Virus record (IMG/VR): IMGVR_UViG_3300022868_000009
Span: 186,001-250,000 of that record
Strand: one strand, 5' to 3'
DNA length: 64,000 nucleotides
The position numbers and the translations under genes were made by a program. This document shows positions 8,073 through 60,683 of this stretch, piece by piece; the first letter of the stretch is position 1, and each line of letters begins with the position of its first letter. The notes below the pieces were generated by a model. The model was given only the letters and a program-made list of their open reading frames with translations. It had not been told where the DNA came from and did no database searches.

Positions 8073-8669
8073 ATGGGAAAAAATAAACATGAAGTCAAAT
8101 TCAAAGAAGCAACTGGACAAGAATTTTCTAAATTTTATCAAGATCAAATGCCTAGATTAACTTGGCATCTTTCAAATTATACAAAAGATTTTGAAGTAGC
8201 AGAAGATTTTGCAAATGACGCATTTGAACAAGCCTTAAAAAAAATTGAAACTTATGATAAAAATAAGTCTCAAATTCAAACTTGGTTATACACAATTGCT
8301 AGACACATTGTTATTCAATCTTGGAATAAAAAGCAAAAAATGCCATCCGTCTCAATTGATAAAGAATATGACGTAAACCTTTCATTAAGTACTTTTTTAC
8401 CTTATGAAGATGGAAAAGAAGATTTAGAAAAGTATAATACTTATGTTGAAAAGGCTAAGATTATAAAAGAAGTTATTAAAAATCTTCCTCCTAAATACAA
8501 AGAAGTCATGGAATTAAGAGAATTAGATAATATGCAATATAAGGAAATTGCGAAGTATCTTAAGAGAAACGAATCTACTGTTAAATCTCAAATTCGAAAA
8601 GGACGTGAATTAATAAGAGATAAAGTGCAGAAAAAATTCGATTACATTGATAAACATGGACTGGAATAA
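8073..8669 (+). CDS. ECF-type RNA polymerase sigma factor
   Basis: Region 2 AEDFANDAF...TWLYTIARH; region 4 LPPKYKEVMELR...YKEIAKYL...STVKSQIRKGR. Confidence 0.9.
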   Translation: MGKNKHEVKFKEATGQEFSKFYQDQMPRLTWHLSNYTKDFEVAEDFANDAFEQALKKIETYDKNKSQIQTWLYTIARHIVIQSWNKKQKMPSVSIDKEYDVNLSLSTFLPYEDGKEDLEKYNTYVEKAKIIKEVIKNLPPKYKEVMELRELDNMQYKEIAKYLKRNESTVKSQIRKGRELIRDKVQKKFDYIDKHGLE

Positions 8670-32840: not shown

Positions 32841-34085
32841 ATGGCTAAAAGTACAGGAAAATTTGACTTTTCCAAATTAACAAGCGTAGTTGAAGATATT
32901 TCAAAAAAGACCGCTATTATGATTGAAAAAGATAATAAACAAACATCTTTTATTGATACTGGTATTTATACTTTCAATGCACTACTTTCTAAAAATATTC
33001 GAACTGGCGGTATTTCAAAGAATAGAATTACCGTATTAGCTGGACCCCCACAATGTGGTAAATCTTATTTATGTTATAATATTGCTAGAAATGCTCAAAA
33101 AGAAGGATATAATATTATTTATATTGATACTGAATTTTCAATTGAAAAACATGAAATGGAAAAATTCGGTATAAATATTAGCGAAGATAGATTAATGTTA
33201 ATAAGATCAAATAAAGTAGAAGATCTTAAAATAATGTTAACGCAACTTCTAGATAATCTTAAAACACAAAAACAAGATGGTGTTGATATAGGAAAAACAA
33301 TCATATTCCTAGATTCAATTGGTCAATTAGCATCCAATAAAGAAGTAGAAGATGCTTTAGGCGGTAAAATTAAAGTTGATATGTCTAGAGCAAAAGCTAT
33401 CAAATCTCTCCTTAGAATTATTAATAGTGATCTTGGATATTTAGATATTCCATTAGTAGCTACTAACCATGTTTATATGACACAAGATTTATATCCAGTT
33501 GCTGTAATGGGCGGTGGTGAAGGAATCACATATACTGCATCTACTGTAGTTTATATGAGTATAGCTAAACTTAAAACAGGTGAAGAAAATAAAGATTATA
33601 AAATGTATGTGTCTGATATTGGGCAATCTGGTGTTATAGTAACTGCAAAATCTAGAAAGAATAGATTAGCAAAACCAATGAAAATTAAATTCGAAATTAA
33701 TCATAACGAAGGAACAAATCCTTATAGAGGACTTGAAGTATTTTGTACTCCAGAAAACTTTGATAAAGTTGGTATTGCAAAAGTTAAAAAAGTAGAATCA
33801 GGTCGAGGTAAAGCTAAGACAATAGAATATCAAGCTGGTGGTACTAAATATTACGTTAAACATTTAGATCAAAGTTTTTATGAAAAATCATTATTTAATG
33901 GTAAAATTTTCACTGATGAAGTAATTACTGCTCTTGAACCAATCGTTCAAACATACTTTGAATATTCATCATATGATGAACAACAGAAAATCATGGATAA
34001 TTTGGACTCTGAACACGCAAAATTTGAATCAGATACTGATTTTGATATTGATGGTGATAATGATGGGCAACTTTTTGATAAATAA
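32841..34085 (+). CDS. uvsX: RecA-like recombinase UvsX
   Basis: GPPQCGKS, YIDTE, FLDSIG, TNHVY, MGGG. Confidence 0.92.
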   Translation: MAKSTGKFDFSKLTSVVEDISKKTAIMIEKDNKQTSFIDTGIYTFNALLSKNIRTGGISKNRITVLAGPPQCGKSYLCYNIARNAQKEGYNIIYIDTEFSIEKHEMEKFGINISEDRLMLIRSNKVEDLKIMLTQLLDNLKTQKQDGVDIGKTIIFLDSIGQLASNKEVEDALGGKIKVDMSRAKAIKSLLRIINSDLGYLDIPLVATNHVYMTQDLYPVAVMGGGEGITYTASTVVYMSIAKLKTGEENKDYKMYVSDIGQSGVIVTAKSRKNRLAKPMKIKFEINHNEGTNPYRGLEVFCTPENFDKVGIAKVKKVESGRGKAKTIEYQAGGTKYYVKHLDQSFYEKSLFNGKIFTDEVITALEPIVQTYFEYSSYDEQQKIMDNLDSEHAKFESDTDFDIDGDNDGQLFDK

Positions 34086-54924: not shown

Positions 54925-55671
54925 TTAATCTTTTAAATCATATCTTTGTAAAATTCCTGCAATTATAGGATTTCTAACAATATCTTCAGGTCTATCTACT
55001 ATAAATTCATAAACTCCAACACCTTTAGCACCTTTCATTAAAGTGAATGCGTCATATAAACCACTACTATTCTTTTTATTATACCTATCAGTTTGTTCTA
55101 AATCACCACTAATAATAAATTTACTATTAAAACCAATTCTAGTTAAAACAGTTTTCATTTGTTTTGGTGTACAATTCTGTGCTTCTTCAAATATTAAAAT
55201 ACTATTATCTATATTCCAACCTCTTAAATAAGCTAAAGCTAAAGGTTTAATTATTTCAGATTCAACTAATTTTTTTCTATTTTCAATGCCTATTATTTTG
55301 TCAATAAGTTTATAAGTTGAATATAAATAAGGTTCTAATTTATCTTCTAAATCACCAGGTAAATAACCTAATTTCTCTTCTGATTCAACAGCTGGTGTAA
55401 TAATATAAATATTATGATAATTGTTAGAAGAATCAGCTAATAATTGTAATGCCTTAATTATACTAATATAACTTTTTCCTACACCGGCAGGTCCTATACA
55501 AATTGATATTTGATTACTATCAATTATTTTTATAAAATCTTTTTGTTTTTCATTTTTACATCTAATCTTAACTTTTTTGCCATATAATATATCTGCAAGT
55601 TGTTTATTATTTAACAACTCTTTATCTTTACTTTTTACATTTAATTTTGTTGTTATTATTGGTTTTCTCAT
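54925..55671 (-). CDS. phoH: PhoH-family ATPase
   Basis: GPAGVGKS, LGYLPG, RG, EEAQN, LTRIG, GDLEQ. Confidence 0.93.
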   Translation of the reverse strand: MRKPIITTKLNVKSKDKELLNNKQLADILYGKKVKIRCKNEKQKDFIKIIDSNQISICIGPAGVGKSYISIIKALQLLADSSNNYHNIYIITPAVESEEKLGYLPGDLEDKLEPYLYSTYKLIDKIIGIENRKKLVESEIIKPLALAYLRGWNIDNSILIFEEAQNCTPKQMKTVLTRIGFNSKFIISGDLEQTDRYNKKNSSGLYDAFTLMKGAKGVGVYEFIVDRPEDIVRNPIIAGILQRYDLKD

Positions 55672-55874: not shown

Positions 55875-56108
55875 ATGAAATATTTAAAGACATACGAAGA
55901 ATTAACCGATTCACAAAAAGAATCTGAATATAATAAAAAATTAGAAGAACTAGAAGATAAAAAAGAAAGACTTCAGAAAAAACTCCAATATTCAGAAGAT
56001 GTAAGAGATCCAGAAAAAACAGAACAAATAAGAAAAGAAAAGAAAGAAGAAATTGAAAAGAATAAAAAGAAAAAGAGTTCTGAAGATCAAAACTCTTTTG
56101 TATCCTAA
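55875..56108 (+). CDS. Putative internal virion protein (MKYLKTYEE tag)
   Basis: TTAATATATA upstream; charged coiled coil. Confidence 0.65.
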   Translation: MKYLKTYEELTDSQKESEYNKKLEELEDKKERLQKKLQYSEDVRDPEKTEQIRKEKKEEIEKNKKKKSSEDQNSFVS

Positions 56109-56749
56109 TTTTTACATAATAAATCTGCAGCACTAGTAGAAGCATATGCTTTAGGTTTACATTCAACCTTAAATCCATAACCACACAACATACCCATCAT
56201 AGCTTTATAAACTTTATTAGATTTATTTCTACCATTTCCATCATCTGAATTAAAATCAACATGTAATACAGGTAATCTATAAGGCATAGAACCATCATAT
56301 TCATTTAATTCATGATCTTTAAAATATTTACCTTTTAATTTTTCATCTAAATATAAAGCAAGTTCAAGTAAATATAAACCTTCTGTATATAATCTATTAA
56401 AAATTGCTTCATTAGAACCTGAACTAATTAATTTTGAATTATCTGGTTTATTTTCTTTATACCATTGATCAAATTTATAACCTCTAGCAGCTAAATATTT
56501 AGGTATATTAATTCTTTTAAAAATACAATGCGCACCATTATGCTTAAAATTATCATAAAATACGATAGTTATAGCATATTGTGTTTTTCGTCTCTTATTT
56601 TTAGAATCACAACCAACAGAAATTGTAACATCACTTGGTACTGAATAATTACCAGATTTATCCCCTAAATATTCCATTATGTAATCAATTTCATTATCAA
56701 CGAAATCACCACCAAACCTTTTAAAGTAAATTTTATTTTTCATTTTCAT
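56105..56749 (-). CDS. RNase H-like YkuK (DUF458) family protein
   Basis: VGCDS, RLYTE, HVDFN, KPKAYASTSAAD. Confidence 0.82.
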   Translation of the reverse strand: MKMKNKIYFKRFGGDFVDNEIDYIMEYLGDKSGNYSVPSDVTISVGCDSKNKRRKTQYAITIVFYDNFKHNGAHCIFKRINIPKYLAARGYKFDQWYKENKPDNSKLISSGSNEAIFNRLYTEGLYLLELALYLDEKLKGKYFKDHELNEYDGSMPYRLPVLHVDFNSDDGNGRNKSNKVYKAMMGMLCGYGFKVECKPKAYASTSAADLLCKN

Positions 56750-56780
56750 TATTTTACAATTTTTAAAAAATTATATATTA

Positions 56781-56808
56781 AAAAATCCCACTGAGAGTGG
56801 GATTTTTT
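56781..56808 (-). terminator. Intrinsic terminator after S1 gene
   Basis: AAAAATCCCACT-GAG-AGTGGGATTTTT. Confidence 0.85.
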
Positions 56809-56810
56809 AT

Positions 56811-57962
56811 TTAATTAGGAAAGTCTAAATAAATCTTTCTATCGTCCCGTATAACAGAAATCACTTTAACTTTCACCTCTTTTCCCACTTCCAACTTTTT
56901 ATCAGCCTTCTGTATATAAGTGTTCTGAATTAACCCTGTTGTCTCTGGATCCAATTCTACTAAAACACCAAATGACTTGATAGATTTAACCTTGCCATCT
57001 TTAATTTGTCCAACTTTAATCTTATCCCACAAAGATTCTCTCAAAAATTGAGATAAAATAATCTTATTACCTTTCAAAATATCTCTAACATAGAATGTTA
57101 CTTCCATACCAGGTTGAACTTGATCAATCTTCCATTCAGGATTAAGATTGACTTTATGTATCATACCAGTTAAACATTCATTAAACTGAACAAATACACC
57201 GTAAGCCATTGTGCCTGTTACTGTTCCTTTATAAGCAATTGTTTTCTTAAGTTTACTAATTTCTACTGGAATTAGAGTTTTAAGATATTTCTTGCGTGAA
57301 ACAACATATACACCTTTCTCTTGTTGTAAAGATTCTAATAACACATTAATTCTACTACCAACTAAATTACTAGATTGTTCATCTGTTAATTTATTAATTC
57401 CAGCCAAAATATTTGGCATAAAAGATTTAATAGTTATATTATCCAACTCAATATCCAACATGAAACCTGCTGGTATTCTTTCAATAACTTTTACAACTAA
57501 CTGACGATTTTCTTTATAATAATCTTTCAATTTGTGCGAAACCTTCGCTTTAATAAGATCTGTTATTGAACCTTTAATTTGAAACGGATTATCTATCACC
57601 TTTATTATCATAACATCAATTTCATCACCAACCTTCAAATTTTGAATAATTTTAAAATCAGATAACTTATTCTCAACATAAATACTATCTTTATAATTTA
57701 TATTAATCTTAAGTTCCCTTTTAGAAATCGTTTCAATTTGACCAGTAACAATGTCACCTATTTTCACCTCATTATATGAAGATTCATTTTCAGACATCAT
57801 ATCTAACATCTCTTTATACTTATCATTAAAAGCTGATGTATCCATATCATCAGTCCACTTGATAATTTTATTATCTTCTTTCTCTAATTCATTCCAAAAC
57901 GCATCATCATCAATAATCGATGTATAATCTAAATTTTCTGGATTTTCTGAATTTTCTTTCAT
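56811..57962 (-). CDS. rpsA: Ribosomal protein bS1 homolog (about 4 S1 domains)
   Basis: GDIVTGQI; VVSRKKYL; GTVTGTMAYGVFV...GMIH; GKVKSIKSFGVLVEL...GLI. Confidence 0.82.
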   Translation of the reverse strand: MKENSENPENLDYTSIIDDDAFWNELEKEDNKIIKWTDDMDTSAFNDKYKEMLDMMSENESSYNEVKIGDIVTGQIETISKRELKININYKDSIYVENKLSDFKIIQNLKVGDEIDVMIIKVIDNPFQIKGSITDLIKAKVSHKLKDYYKENRQLVVKVIERIPAGFMLDIELDNITIKSFMPNILAGINKLTDEQSSNLVGSRINVLLESLQQEKGVYVVSRKKYLKTLIPVEISKLKKTIAYKGTVTGTMAYGVFVQFNECLTGMIHKVNLNPEWKIDQVQPGMEVTFYVRDILKGNKIILSQFLRESLWDKIKVGQIKDGKVKSIKSFGVLVELDPETTGLIQNTYIQKADKKLEVGKEVKVKVISVIRDDRKIYLDFPN

Positions 57963-58017
57963 AAATTAATTTTTTTGGTTAAACTTCTTTTATCTTTACA
58001 TATACTTAAACAATAAA

Positions 58018-58046
58018 AAAAAGTTGTTAAAAAAATTAACAACTTT
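58018..58046. terminator. Perfect inverted repeat overlapping the S1 promoter
   Basis: AAAAGTTGTTAA-AAAAA-TTAACAACTTTT. Confidence 0.6.
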
Positions 58047-58068
58047 TCTTAATTATATTAAAAATGTT

Positions 58069-58464
58069 TCAATAACTAATTTCTAGTTTTTGTAAATAAT
58101 TATTTAATACTGATGCCCTTTCATAATCTTCAATTTCTAAATAATATTTCATTTTTTTGATAAGATCCTGTTCGCTGTCATTATATGAAAAAACGTTATT
58201 TTTTGTAATGTCTACAACATATTTCTTTCTTTTTTTGTTGTAAGTAACATCATAGTCTTTTAATTTTTGTCTGACATCTTCTATCGTATAATTATAGTCA
58301 GAATTTTCATCAAGTTTATTTAAACTCTCCGATTCTATCAACATTAACATAAACTCTTCTGAGAATGCCTTTTTCTCACATAAAAAATCACACAGAATTT
58401 CAGGATCTGTGCCAATAATCTTTAATAGTGAGTTGAAATTTTCCTTAAATCTTCTTGTAGCCAT
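58069..58464 (-). CDS. Hypothetical protein with UVR-like C-terminus
   Basis: EIEDYERASVL. Confidence 0.6.
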   Translation of the reverse strand: MATRRFKENFNSLLKIIGTDPEILCDFLCEKKAFSEEFMLMLIESESLNKLDENSDYNYTIEDVRQKLKDYDVTYNKKRKKYVVDITKNNVFSYNDSEQDLIKKMKYYLEIEDYERASVLNNYLQKLEISY

Positions 58465-59978: not shown

Positions 59979-60683
59979 TTAGATATTCACATCACCTTGT
60001 TCCTTAATATAACTAATTAAATCAGGTCTTCTTTCACCGCCACGAGGATATGGATCATTTCCAAATGCTTTATCTAAAGTGCCTTGTTGGAAATTTATAG
60101 GAATATCATAAATTGAAGTACTAGTCGCAACATCATCATCGTCAATTTCCCAAAATATATCAATCCAATTAAATCTAAATGTTATAGTAAATGTAATTTC
60201 TTGAACCTCTTGAATTTGATATGCTAAACTAATAGAAGATATATTTTTTAATAAAACATCCCTAAATGATACAGTATAAATCAAATCCCCATCTTTATTC
60301 AAAACATGTAATAAAAATAAGGGTAAATGAGTCTTCTTAGGGTTTAAATAACTCTCAATTAATACCTGTAATAATATAAAATAATTTAAATGAGAATCAA
60401 CAGATCTAAAAGTTATATCTAAATCATTACTAAATTTATCCTGTACATTTTGAGCCTCTCTCCATGAATATTTCTTACCATATTTTAATCTCTGCTCTGG
60501 ATTATCTAATGTAAAAGAAGGAAAAGATATTTCCTTTATCGTAGAATTAACATAATCAATAACAGAATCATATGCTACAAAATTTTTATCCATTAACTTC
60601 TTAAAATCTCTGTATAAATACTCTTCGATAAAATCAACCGGTAAGTTGAATATAAACTGATTGTTTTGTGAACTTAATCTCAT
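59979..60683 (-). CDS. Tail-tube-like (gp19-fold) structural protein
   Basis: LDITFR...LHVLNKDG...VSF....TFTITFRF pattern. Confidence 0.55.
   Translation of the reverse strand: MRLSSQNNQFIFNLPVDFIEEYLYRDFKKLMDKNFVAYDSVIDYVNSTIKEISFPSFTLDNPEQRLKYGKKYSWREAQNVQDKFSNDLDITFRSVDSHLNYFILLQVLIESYLNPKKTHLPLFLLHVLNKDGDLIYTVSFRDVLLKNISSISLAYQIQEVQEITFTITFRFNWIDIFWEIDDDDVATSTSIYDIPINFQQGTLDKAFGNDPYPRGGERRPDLISYIKEQGDVNI

What the first reader, a model, noticed from the sequence alone, without database searches (positions are those of the whole stretch)
56811..58046. Phage ribosomal protein S1 with its own ECF-type promoter overlapped by a palindrome
Seen: a 383-aa protein with about 4 S1 domains, expressed as a stand-alone unit (CAACTT-N16-TATATG promoter at 58026-57999, terminator at 56781). 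The -35 element lies inside a perfect 12-bp inverted repeat. Known: bS1 recruits A/U-rich leaders, and S1 homologs have been reported in huge phages. Inference: a shortened S1 replaces host S1 and biases ribosomes toward the A-rich SD-less phage leaders seen throughout this window; the palindrome may be an operator or upstream terminator.
Basis: partly seen in the sequence, partly recalled or inferred. Interest (0 to 1): 0.65.

Follow-up and report, generated by a model that had tools for sequence, protein, structure and literature searches.

The report
Huge-phage ribosomal protein S1 gene
A very large bacteriophage carries its own shortened, four-domain copy of ribosomal protein S1 as a self-contained gene with its own conserved promoter and terminator; this kind of gene was already reported in huge phages, so it is a well-documented new member, not a new kind of thing.

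Summary
Window 56811-57962 (-) encodes a 383-aa protein with four OB/S1 folds after an N-terminal helix-loop-helix. Its first two domains match only the ribosome-binding domains d1-d2 of bacterial bS1. The uS2-contact residues Asp39 and Lys43 of E. coli bS1 have conserved equivalents (D/N87; K91 invariant in 42 homologues).

The window lies in a 345-kb fragment (about 48% complete) of a salt-lake huge phage. Its nearest relatives are the 634-735 kb Mahaphage genomes of Al-Shayeb et al. 2020, which already reported phage rpS1 together with SD-less leaders.

The proposed promoter, CAACTT-N16-TATATG, looks like chance on its own. However, 14 of 15 diverged orthologous loci have AACTT-N16-TA(T/C)A at -50 to -87. 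In this genome the 16-nt spacer is specifically enriched before genes. The downstream terminator is conserved in 14 of 15 loci.

The 12-bp palindrome is real but not conserved. It sits 22 nt after the upstream gene's stop codon and belongs to a genome-wide class of A-tract/stem/T-tract terminators, so terminator is the better reading than operator.

"ECF-type" is only partly supported: the -35 has an AAC core and the phage encodes an ECF sigma, but the -10 is not ECF-like and the link is untested. Ribosome binding and preference for phage mRNAs remain inferences.

The parts
56811..57962 (-). Coding sequence of the phage bS1 homologue (383 aa, P0001), ATG 57962-57960, TAA 56813-56811
57768..57962 (-). 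N-terminal region, aa 1-65: acidic, predicted helix-loop-helix (helices 13-27 and 47-58). It carries the family motifs F22-W23 and F45/Y49/L53. This is the least conserved part of the protein.
   Evidence: no significant match to any PDB N-terminus
57564..57767 (-). S1 domain 1 (aa 66-133). It matches only the d1 position of rpsA models. K91 (invariant) and D/N87 align to E. coli bS1 K43 and D39, which are uS2 contacts.
   Evidence: PMC10123108
57294..57512 (-). S1 domain 2 (aa 151-223). It matches only the d2 position of rpsA models and is the most conserved domain (19 invariant columns of 73).
57045..57245 (-). S1 domain 3 (aa 240-306): canonical RNA-binding S1 fold with the G-x-F-V and G-M-I-H motifs
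56820..57026 (-). S1 domain 4 (aa 313-381): canonical S1 domain and the best Pfam stretch. Closest single-domain models are GSP13/CvfD and PNPase S1.
58021..58026 (-). -35-like element CAACTT (family consensus AAACTT)
57999..58004 (-). -10-like element TATATG, 16 nt after the -35 (family: TA[T/C]A[A/T]n). Predicted transcription start about 57991-57993, giving a 5' UTR of about 30 nt.
   Evidence: the transcription start is inferred, not measured
58019..58047 (-). Perfect 12-bp inverted repeat with a 5-nt loop, flanked by an A tract and a T tract, 22 nt after the stop codon of gene 58069..58464. Best read as that gene's intrinsic terminator, possibly bidirectional. Its right arm overlaps the -35 element.
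57978..57983 (-). Leader motif TTTAAC at -21 from the ATG. TT[T/A]AAC or TTAAC sits at the same distance in 11 of 16 S1 loci, against 12 of 443 genes genome-wide. Possible gene-specific leader element.
56779..56809 (-). Intrinsic terminator of the S1 unit: 14-bp stem, -16.7 kcal/mol, then a U run. It starts 2 nt after the stop codon.
56771..56782 (-). Copy of the genome's main promoter motif TTTAATATATAA, directly after the S1 terminator and 31 nt before the ATG of the next gene (56105..56749). It marks the start of the next transcription unit.
8073..8669 (+). Phage-encoded ECF-type sigma factor (198 aa; Sigma70_r2 + r4_2). Candidate, unproven, reader of the AACTT-N16-TAyAAt promoter class.

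Best explanation
The gene encodes a phage version of ribosomal protein bS1, cut down to four domains. It belongs to a large, well-conserved family (about 370-430 aa) carried by huge Mahaphage/Lak-like phages.

Shown:
- Domains 1-2 are of the specialised bS1 ribosome-anchoring type and keep the equivalents of the uS2-contact residues.
- Domains 3-4 are canonical RNA-binding S1 folds.
- The gene is a monocistronic unit, bracketed by a conserved promoter of a minor phage class (AAACTT-N16-TAyAAt) and a strong intrinsic terminator.

Inferred:
- During infection the protein docks on the host 30S subunit at the uS2 site, in place of or in addition to host bS1. Domains 3-4 then capture A/U-rich, SD-less leaders, which keeps or boosts initiation on phage messages.
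- The promoter belongs to a non-host, probably middle or replication-phase class. It is shared with the topoisomerase II, AAA ATPase, exonuclease and RecA-like genes. The phage's own ECF-type sigma may read it.

The 12-bp palindrome is the intrinsic terminator of the upstream gene. In this genome it happens to be packed onto the -35 element.
For: Identity as bS1:
- All top PDB sequence hits are bS1, aligned collinearly to d1-d4: E. coli 10-347, F. johnsoniae 29-372, M. smegmatis 28-364.
- The Foldseek top hit is E. coli bS1 at E = 7e-23.
- Domains d1, d2 and d1+d2 each hit only rpsA models, at the d1/d2 positions.
- K91 is invariant and position 87 is D in 32 and N in 9 of 42 sequences. These align to E. 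coli K43 and D39 (PMC10123108).
- The first three OB folds suffice for S1 activities on the 30S subunit in E. coli (PMC3858243), so a four-domain protein could be fully active.
- Complex prediction of aa 1-135 with F. johnsoniae uS2 scored 0.58 against a best control of 0.11. The tool rates this as weak support; at 0.60 or under, 7 of 80 solved complexes and both of the 2 mismatched pairs that passed fall in that range.

Phage origin:
- The window is part of a 345-kb virus record.
- More than 120 homologues of 50-77% identity lie on contigs of up to 614 kb.
- 22 IMG/VR loci carry the gene, including a complete 640-kb genome with terminal repeats.
- The family signature peptides occur in only 1 of 185,579 species genomes.

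Transcription unit:
- Promoter architecture in 14 of 15 loci and terminator in 14 of 15 loci.
- Spacer-16 enrichment: 11 sites near gene starts, against 1-5 for other spacers.

Host context:
- A-rich leaders without SD and with A at -3.
- TAnnTTTG-type promoters.
- The nearest relatives are predicted to infect Bacteroidetes (PMC7162821).
Against: - No measurement of ribosome binding, expression or transcription start. No RNA runs hold this sequence.
- All rpsA equivalog models score far below their cut-offs (best 112.7 against 624; 96.9 against 368).
- The N-terminal 65 aa have no detectable similarity to any solved bS1 N-terminus.
- The complex score is in the weak range and may only reflect resemblance to solved bS1-uS2 complexes.
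- Domains 5-6 are missing.
- The leaders do not differ visibly from what is expected of host leaders.
- Many phage genes appear leaderless or short-leadered, which limits what an S1 swap could achieve.
- The -10 is not ECF-like. The sigma homologues of relatives lack the motif upstream.
Confidence: 0.6

Rival explanations
1. The protein descends from bS1 but works off the ribosome. It could be a phage RNA chaperone, an mRNA protector, or a cofactor of a phage enzyme. Host S1 serves T4 RegB and Q-beta replicase in this way.
For: - S1 has documented extraribosomal roles in phage biology (reviewed in PMC13157829, as read).
- Q-beta replicase binds exactly d1-d2 of S1; the PDB hits 4q7j and 4r71 appear.
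- The N-terminal 65 aa are family-specific and unmatched in the PDB.
- The genome is T4-like in its portal and RecA/UvsX-like genes.
- Al-Shayeb et al. themselves left open "on or off the ribosome".
Against: - The uS2-contact residue equivalents are conserved (K91 invariant) and d2 is the most conserved domain. Both fit a conserved ribosomal partner.
- The weak positive complex score with uS2.
- No partner enzyme was identified.
Confidence: 0.25
2. The palindrome is an operator for a dimeric repressor that gates the S1 promoter, as the first reader suggested as one option.
For: It is a perfect 12-bp inverted repeat covering the -35 hexamer. One other locus (L006) also has a palindrome overlapping its AAACTT; I saw this by eye in the output and did not test it.
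Against: - Only 3 of 15 orthologous loci have any strong hairpin upstream, and elsewhere it does not overlap the -35.
- The element has the A-tract/stem/T-tract form, and the position (22 nt after a stop codon), of 28 other long inverted repeats in this genome that sit just after gene ends.
- No second copy of the arm sequence was looked for or seen as a regulon.
Confidence: 0.1
3. The AACTT-N16-TATATG match is not a functional promoter. S1 is transcribed by read-through from the upstream operon, whose promoter motif lies at window ~62900.
For: The upstream hairpin is AT-rich (2 GC pairs) and could leak. Sigma-70-like matches occur at chance level in this AT-rich DNA. A main-class promoter motif precedes the upstream gene block (genome 248900).
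Against: The motif has identical spacing in 14 of 15 diverged loci. In several of them it lies inside or right at the end of the upstream ORF. Spacer 16 is specifically enriched before genes in this genome.
Confidence: 0.1
4. The gene is cellular (host) DNA joined to phage sequence by misassembly or contamination.
For: Ribosomal protein genes on viral contigs have historically raised this worry (PMC6375957). One homologue sits on a contig binned into a bacterial MAG (L035).
Against: - Same GC (~25%), promoter and terminator grammar as its neighbours.
- Orthologues lie in many independent huge-phage contigs, including complete genomes.
- The stretch is held by runs of about 20 studies.
- The family is absent from 185,578 other species genomes.
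Confidence: 0.01

Closest known systems
Putative rpS1 genes of huge phages (Al-Shayeb et al. 2020, Nature; Mahaphage clade, LR756501-LR756504, LR745206; Lak phages)
   Same: Orthologous ORFs of 40-46% identity over 81-95% of the length in the 634-735 kb genomes, and partial matches in Lak phages. Both show the same association with SD-less leaders and predicted Bacteroidetes hosts.
   Different: That paper noted that "true" rpS1 is hard to confirm, and mentions proteins with up to six S1 domains. Here the family is consistently four-domain, with bS1-specific d1-d2 and conserved uS2-contact residues. The conserved dedicated promoter, terminator and leader motif were found here; I did not search whether they have been described elsewhere.
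Bacterial ribosomal protein bS1 (E. coli RpsA, 557 aa; Flavobacterium johnsoniae bS1, PDB 9zcd)
   Same: Collinear d1-d4. The d1-d2 pair is of the ribosome-binding type. D39 and K43 equivalents are present. A helix precedes d1, carrying hydrophobic/aromatic residues at i and i+4 (F/L45, Y49).
   Different: Lacks d5-d6. About 20-25% identity. Fails every rpsA equivalog cut-off. It has a family-specific acidic N-terminal extension (FW motif) with no detectable match to the F. johnsoniae helix-loop-helix that contacts uS8 and uS2 (PMC13000457).
Four-domain S1 of Firmicutes (NCBIfam PRK06676, 391 aa)
   Same: Same length and domain count. The alignment covers model positions 2-345 of 391.
   Different: Only 97 bits against a cut-off of 368. 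No evidence of descent from Firmicutes.
bS1 of Microcystis jumbo phage PhiMa05 and other virus-encoded ribosomal proteins (bS21 and others)
   Same: A virus-encoded small-subunit protein acting at the initiation step. This genome also encodes bS21.
   Different: PhiMa05 bS1 clusters with Vampirovibrio proteins and sits next to other ribosomal protein genes (PMC13157829). Here S1 stands alone. bS21 is 55 kb away under a host-type promoter and is absent from 5 related S1-bearing genomes.
ECF (group 4) sigma-dependent promoters, e.g. SigW/SigM/RpoE type
   Same: AAC core in the -35, a 16-nt spacer, and an ECF sigma encoded by the same genome.
   Different: The -10 is TAyAAt-like, not CGT-like. 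Sigma-promoter pairing is untested and autoregulation is not conserved.

Membership tests
Ribosomal protein bS1 | Tandem array of 4-6 S1/OB-fold domains | tested here: met
   Four OB folds in the AF2 model (pLDDT 81); Pfam S1 67 bits
Ribosomal protein bS1 | N-terminal two domains of the divergent, ribosome-anchoring d1-d2 type, in that order | tested here: met
   aa 62-135, 136-238 and 62-238 hit only rpsA models, at the d1, d2 and d1-d2 positions. The family profile aligns collinearly to bS1 d1-d4 of three phyla.
Ribosomal protein bS1 | uS2-contact residues of OB1 (E. coli Lys43 at the Zn pocket; Asp39) | tested here: met
   K91 is invariant in 42 of 42 sequences. Position 87 is D in 32 and N in 9 of 42. 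Both align to K43 and D39 (PMC10123108).
Ribosomal protein bS1 | N-terminal helix with an aromatic pair (E. coli Phe5/Phe9) that stacks on uS2 | tested here: inconclusive
   A predicted helix at 47-58 precedes d1, with F45 (F/L/I) and Y49 (Y in 32 of 42). HMM alignments do not place these residues on F5/F9, and the N-terminal profile finds no bS1 N-terminus.
Ribosomal protein bS1 | Scores above the curated rpsA equivalog cut-offs | tested here: not met
   Best 112.7 bits against 624; PRK06676 96.9 against 368; TIGR00717 80.6 against 577. It is a divergent homologue, not an equivalog by NCBI's criteria.
Ribosomal protein bS1 | Physical, exchangeable association with the 30S subunit through uS2 | not testable with these tools
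   Only a prediction: ipSAE 0.58 against a best control of 0.11, which the tool rates as weak support
Huge-phage rpS1 family (Mahaphage/Lak-like) | Orthologue in the published huge-phage genomes and location on large viral contigs | tested here: met
   tblastn hits at 40-46% identity in LR756501-4 and LR745206. Homologues lie on contigs up to 614-676 kb. The window itself is part of a 345-kb virus record.
ECF sigma-dependent promoter | -35 element with AAC core and a spacer of about 16-17 nt | tested here: met
   CAACTT-N16 here; AAACTT-N16 in 13 other loci
ECF sigma-dependent promoter | -10 element with CGT core | tested here: not met
   The -10 is TATATG here, and TATAAT, TACAAT or TACAAG in relatives. 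The ECF consensus itself is from my own knowledge.
ECF sigma-dependent promoter | A cognate ECF sigma that reads it (usually autoregulated) | tested here: inconclusive
   The phage ECF sigma is at window 8073-8669. An AACTT-N16 match lies 111 nt upstream of it but overlaps a main-class motif. The sigma homologues of relatives have no such motif.
Intrinsic (Rho-independent) terminator, for the palindrome 58019-58047 | Stable stem-loop followed by a U run, shortly after a stop codon | tested here: met
   -14 to -17 kcal/mol, z = -5.1, U run follows. It lies 22 nt after the stop of 58069..58464 and has the same build as 28 other long inverted repeats near gene ends. The stem has only 2 GC pairs, so the consensus scan missed it.

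The most novel reading that the evidence does not exclude
The four-domain S1 is a dedicated ribosome-retuning module of huge phages.

- It is made from its own phage-specific promoter.
- It is kept in check through a conserved leader element (TT[T/A]AAC at -21) that could act as an autogenous operator.
- It displaces host bS1 on SD-blind Bacteroidota ribosomes. In this phage it would do so together with a phage bS21, which in host ribosomes stabilises the bS1 N-terminus and sequesters the anti-SD.
- The result would be phage-specialised ribosomes that prefer phage messages.
Probability: 0.15. Interest if true: 0.75.

Novelty: new member of a known kind. Interest (0 to 1): 0.4.

Why it matters
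Virus-encoded ribosomal proteins blur the line between viruses and cells. They also suggest that phages remodel the host ribosome rather than just feed it mRNA.

For S1 the published caveat was that "true" rpS1 cannot be told from other S1-domain proteins. This locus and its family pass three specific bS1 tests: d1-d2 type, collinearity, and conserved uS2-contact residues. They also come with a conserved promoter, leader and terminator. That gives a concrete, clonable candidate for direct tests in Flavobacterium or Bacteroides translation systems.

It does not by itself change what is known: phage rpS1 and its link to SD-less leaders were reported in 2020.

Tried and rejected
- PHROGs: no family for the S1 protein.
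- Megablast of 8 kb around the gene against GenBank phages: no match.
- N-terminal profile (A2) against the PDB: only weak, repeat-driven Rrp5 hits and nothing for the F. johnsoniae bS1 N-terminus. The FW-motif resemblance to the FLANFNWHNF helix (PMC13000457) therefore stays anecdotal.
- Cellular relatives for a domain-by-domain tree. No phylogeny against host bS1 could be built, and the origin of the family is unresolved.
- Sigma autoregulation: the motif upstream of the sigma gene is ambiguous here and absent in relatives.
- S1-bS21 co-occurrence: bS21 is absent from 5 related S1-bearing genomes, 2 of them complete. The pairing is not a family trait.
- MotA-like activator: no hit, but the control genomes were also silent, so this is uninformative.
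- RNA evidence: all 20 runs that hold the stretch are DNA (salt-lake and marine). I therefore did not use read laying, since contigs cannot show transcript ends.
- Rfam: nothing near the gathering scores.
- TAG or TGA recoding: no gain in ORF coverage despite two CTA-anticodon tRNAs.
- Complex prediction gave "weak support" only. I report it with its control and do not treat it as evidence of binding.
Full report
**What is there**

The minus-strand ORF 56811..57962 (ATG to TAA) encodes 383 aa. Pfam finds S1 domains (67 bits, three stretches, best 314-379). PHROGs has no family for the protein. NCBIfam's rpsA models align along the whole protein, for example PRK06676 positions 2-345 of 391 and PRK06299.1-2 positions 12-371 of 580. 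All of them score far below their equivalog cut-offs.

An AlphaFold2 model built on 42 homologues has mean pLDDT 81. It shows two N-terminal helices (13-27 and 47-58) followed by four OB folds at 71-132, 155-222, 243-304 and 320-380.

**Where it comes from**

The window is bases 186001-250000 of a 344,634-bp IMG/VR virus record that CheckV rates 48% complete. GC is about 25% throughout. The held genome carries 35 tRNA genes, a T4-like portal, a RecA/UvsX-like protein and a type II topoisomerase.

The best GenBank phage matches to the protein are the 634-735 kb genomes LR756501-LR756504 and LR745206 (40-46% identity). Lak phages give partial matches. These are the Mahaphage genomes of Al-Shayeb et al. 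2020, which were predicted to infect Bacteroidetes.

The word-index protein search returned more than 120 proteins of 354-426 aa at 49-77% identity, on contigs of up to 614 kb. IMG/VR gave 22 loci, one of them in a complete 640-kb genome with terminal repeats. Runs that hold the stretch are salt-lake and marine metagenomes, all of them DNA.

Two signature peptides of the family occur in only one of 185,579 species genomes. That one is a 26-kb MAG contig with a 52%-identical copy, most likely phage DNA that was binned with the MAG. This is a phage family, not host contamination.

**Is it bS1 or just an S1-domain protein?**

- Every top PDB sequence hit is bS1, aligned collinearly to d1-d4. With the family profile, the matches are E. 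coli 10-347 (111 bits), F. johnsoniae 29-372 and M. smegmatis 28-364.
- The Foldseek top hit is E. coli bS1 in the 30S mRNA delivery complex (E = 7e-23, 365 columns).
- Split by domain, aa 62-135, 136-238 and 62-238 hit only rpsA models, at the d1 and d2 positions. Domains d3 and d4 also hit GSP13/CvfD, PNPase and RNase R.
- In E. coli, d1 anchors bS1 on uS2 through the Phe5/Phe9 helix, through Lys43 at the Zn pocket, and through other OB1 residues (PMC10123108).
- In the profile alignment the family's invariant K91 falls on K43, and position 87 (D in 32, N in 9 of 42) falls on D39.
- A helix directly before d1 carries F/L45 and Y49 (Y in 32 of 42), spaced i and i+4 like F5 and F9. The HMM alignments do not superpose them, so I rate this feature inconclusive.
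- Domain d2 is the most conserved part of the protein (19 invariant columns of 73). The N-terminal 65 aa are the least conserved.
- The N-terminal profile finds no solved bS1 N-terminus. The likeness of the family's FW motif to the FLANFNWHNF helix of F. johnsoniae bS1 (PMC13000457) is unproven.
- A complex prediction of aa 1-135 with F. johnsoniae uS2 scored 0.58 against a best control of 0.11. The tool rates that as weak support: at 0.60 or under it counts 7 of 80 solved complexes and both of the 2 mismatched pairs that passed. Contacts agreed at 94% or more between runs, and partner pLDDT was 71-72. It may only reflect resemblance to solved bS1-uS2 complexes.
- In E. coli the first three OB folds retain all S1 activities on the 30S subunit (PMC3858243). 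A d1-d4 protein could therefore be fully functional.

My reading is that this is a genuine but divergent bS1 homologue. Ribosome binding is likely but not shown.

**The transcription unit**

In this AT-rich DNA, sigma-70-like matches occur at chance level (25 found, 26 expected). Two results lift this site above chance.

- In 14 of 15 non-redundant orthologous loci, whose flanks are otherwise unalignable, AACTT is followed after exactly 16 nt by TA(T/C)A. The motif sits 50-87 nt before the ATG. From base composition I expect about 0.03 such matches per 100-nt region.
- In this genome AACTT-N16-TA[TC]A[AT] occurs 11 times at 30-110 nt before a gene start. Spacers of 12-15 and 17-21 nt give 1-5 each.

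Other genes behind this motif include the topoisomerase II, an AAA ATPase, a PolB-type exonuclease, a CNNM/CBS protein, the portal gene and the sigma gene. A RecA-like gene has nearby matches with 15- and 16-nt spacers.

This motif is distinct from the genome's main upstream motif, TTTAATATATA(A/G). That motif has TAATATATA 54 times in upstream intergenic regions against 4.7 expected, and 118 copies genome-wide. It is also distinct from a host-like class, TTTGaa...CCGTATATTTGTAT, which fits the Bacteroidetes TAnnTTTG -7 element.

**Is the promoter "ECF-type"?**

The phage encodes one sigma factor in the held DNA, at window 8073-8669 (198 aa, regions 2 and 4 only). It passes the sigma70-ECF superfamily cut-off (80.6 against 42.9) and is most similar to the SigW, SigM and Bacteroidetes ECF models.

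An AAC-containing -35 with a 16-nt spacer fits ECF promoters, but the -10 (TAyAAt) does not have their CGT core (consensus from my own knowledge). Homologues of the sigma exist in 4 of 5 related genomes. None has the motif upstream, and two are fused into ORFs of about 500 aa. The label is a reasonable lead and not a finding.

**Terminators and the palindrome**

The hairpin at 56779-56809 (14-bp stem, -16.7 kcal/mol, z = -6.3, then a U run) starts 2 nt after the stop codon. An equivalent strong terminator follows the S1 gene in 14 of 15 loci. A copy of the main promoter motif follows it directly and starts the next unit. The gene is therefore a conserved monocistronic unit.

The upstream palindrome (58047-58036 and 58030-58019, 5-nt loop) is perfect and folds well (-17 kcal/mol with flanks, z = -5.1). 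Several facts point to a terminator:

- It lies 22 nt after the stop codon of gene 58069..58464.
- It is flanked by an A tract and a T tract.
- It has the same build as 28 other perfect inverted repeats of 12 bp or more, most of which sit within about 30 nt of a gene end.
- Inverted repeats of 10 bp or more number 62 in the genome against 12-22 in shuffles, and 37 of them lie in the 12.7% of the genome that is intergenic.
- Only 3 of 15 orthologous loci have a strong hairpin upstream of S1, and elsewhere it does not overlap the -35.

Terminator of the upstream gene is therefore the better reading. The overlap with the -35 looks like tight packing. A leaky terminator could still allow some read-through into S1.

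**The functional inference**

Leaders in this genome are A-rich (55-63% A at -20 to -10, against about 42% background). They have 65% A at -3 and almost no SD (GGAG in 12 of 443 genes). This matches what is described for Bacteroidia (PMC6847099, PMC13000457) and the correlation reported for rpS1-bearing huge phages.

Because host messages are expected to look the same, these leaders give no handle for selective translation of phage mRNA. The main promoter motif also lies either 14-16 nt (16 genes) or mostly 25-35 nt before the start codon. If the motif is a -10 element, that implies leaderless or roughly 15-nt leaders, on which an upstream-binding S1 has little to hold.

Supplementing or replacing host bS1 is plausible. 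A bias toward phage leaders is not supported by anything I could test.

**Comparison with what is known, and novelty**

Phage-encoded rpS1, its link with SD-less leaders, and the idea that it hijacks initiation were published in 2020 (PMC7162821). A cultivated cyanophage with bS1 was reported in 2026 (PMC13157829).

What this analysis adds:
- The Mahaphage-type protein is a uniform four-domain family with bS1-specific d1-d2 and conserved uS2-contact residues.
- It carries a conserved dedicated promoter, terminator and leader motif.

That makes it a new member of a known kind, of moderate interest.

**Limits**

- No expression data exist for this sequence.
- No cellular bS1 set could be fetched for a tree.
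- The host is inferred, not known.
- The genome is about half complete, so absences (a second sigma, MotA-like factors) carry little weight.

Noticed in passing
G000 genome 35981-42442, 112614-115601, 140629-140701, 164529-165911, 313725-322525 (outside the window): 35 tRNA genes in five clusters, including two with anticodon CTA (TAG suppressors). Reading TAG or TGA as sense barely raises ORF coverage (72.0% to 73.5% and 73.8%), so this fragment shows no sign of recoding.
   Followed up: partly
genome-wide; e.g. window 56771-56782 (-), 62900 (-), 4491 (+): The main upstream motif TTTAATATATA(A/G) has 118 copies; TAATATATA occurs 54 times in upstream intergenic regions against 4.7 expected. 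Its distance to the start codon is bimodal: 14-16 nt (16 genes, with a sharp peak at 14) and about 25-35 nt. If it is a -10-like element, many phage mRNAs would be leaderless or have leaders of about 15 nt.
   Followed up: partly
G000 genome 309184-319640 and 270373, 341168 (outside the window): A third, host-like promoter class, TTTGaa-N-(T)CCGTATATTTGTAT, fits the Bacteroidetes TAnnTTTG -7 element. Several of the genes behind it carry strong SD sequences (AAGGAGGA, 9 in intergenic regions against 0.8 expected). That is odd for a phage of presumably SD-blind hosts.
   Followed up: no
G000 genome 298494-298652 (-), locus L034: A phage bS21 gene (about 62 aa; Pfam Ribosomal_S21 36.5 bits) behind a TTTG...TATATTTG host-type promoter, with no SD. 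It is absent from five related S1-bearing genomes, two of them complete.
   Followed up: partly
window 8073-8669 (+): An ECF-type sigma factor (198 aa) is the only sigma in the held 345 kb. In two complete relatives (G004, G005) the homologous part is the C-terminal portion of an ORF of about 500 aa.
   Followed up: partly
window 57978-57983 (-) and the same position in L005-L008, L010, L011, L013, L015, L022, L035: TT[T/A]AAC or TTAAC sits about 21 nt before the S1 start codon in 11 of 16 loci, whatever the promoter distance. Only 12 of 443 genes genome-wide have it. It could be a gene-specific leader element, for example an autogenous operator like that of E. coli rpsA.
   Followed up: partly
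L035 (JBBAEW010000027.1, 26-kb contig of a Saccharofermentanales MAG): Carries a 52%-identical copy of the phage S1 family. Probably a huge-phage fragment that was binned into a bacterial MAG.
   Followed up: no
window 54925-55671 (-), 59979-60683 (-), 32841-34085 (+): Neighbouring genes: PhoH-like ATPase (phrog_170, 1e-60), a tail-tube-like protein (phrog_45), and a RecA/UvsX-like recombinase. The two genes flanking S1 (58069..58464 and 56105..56749) have no informative family match.
   Followed up: partly
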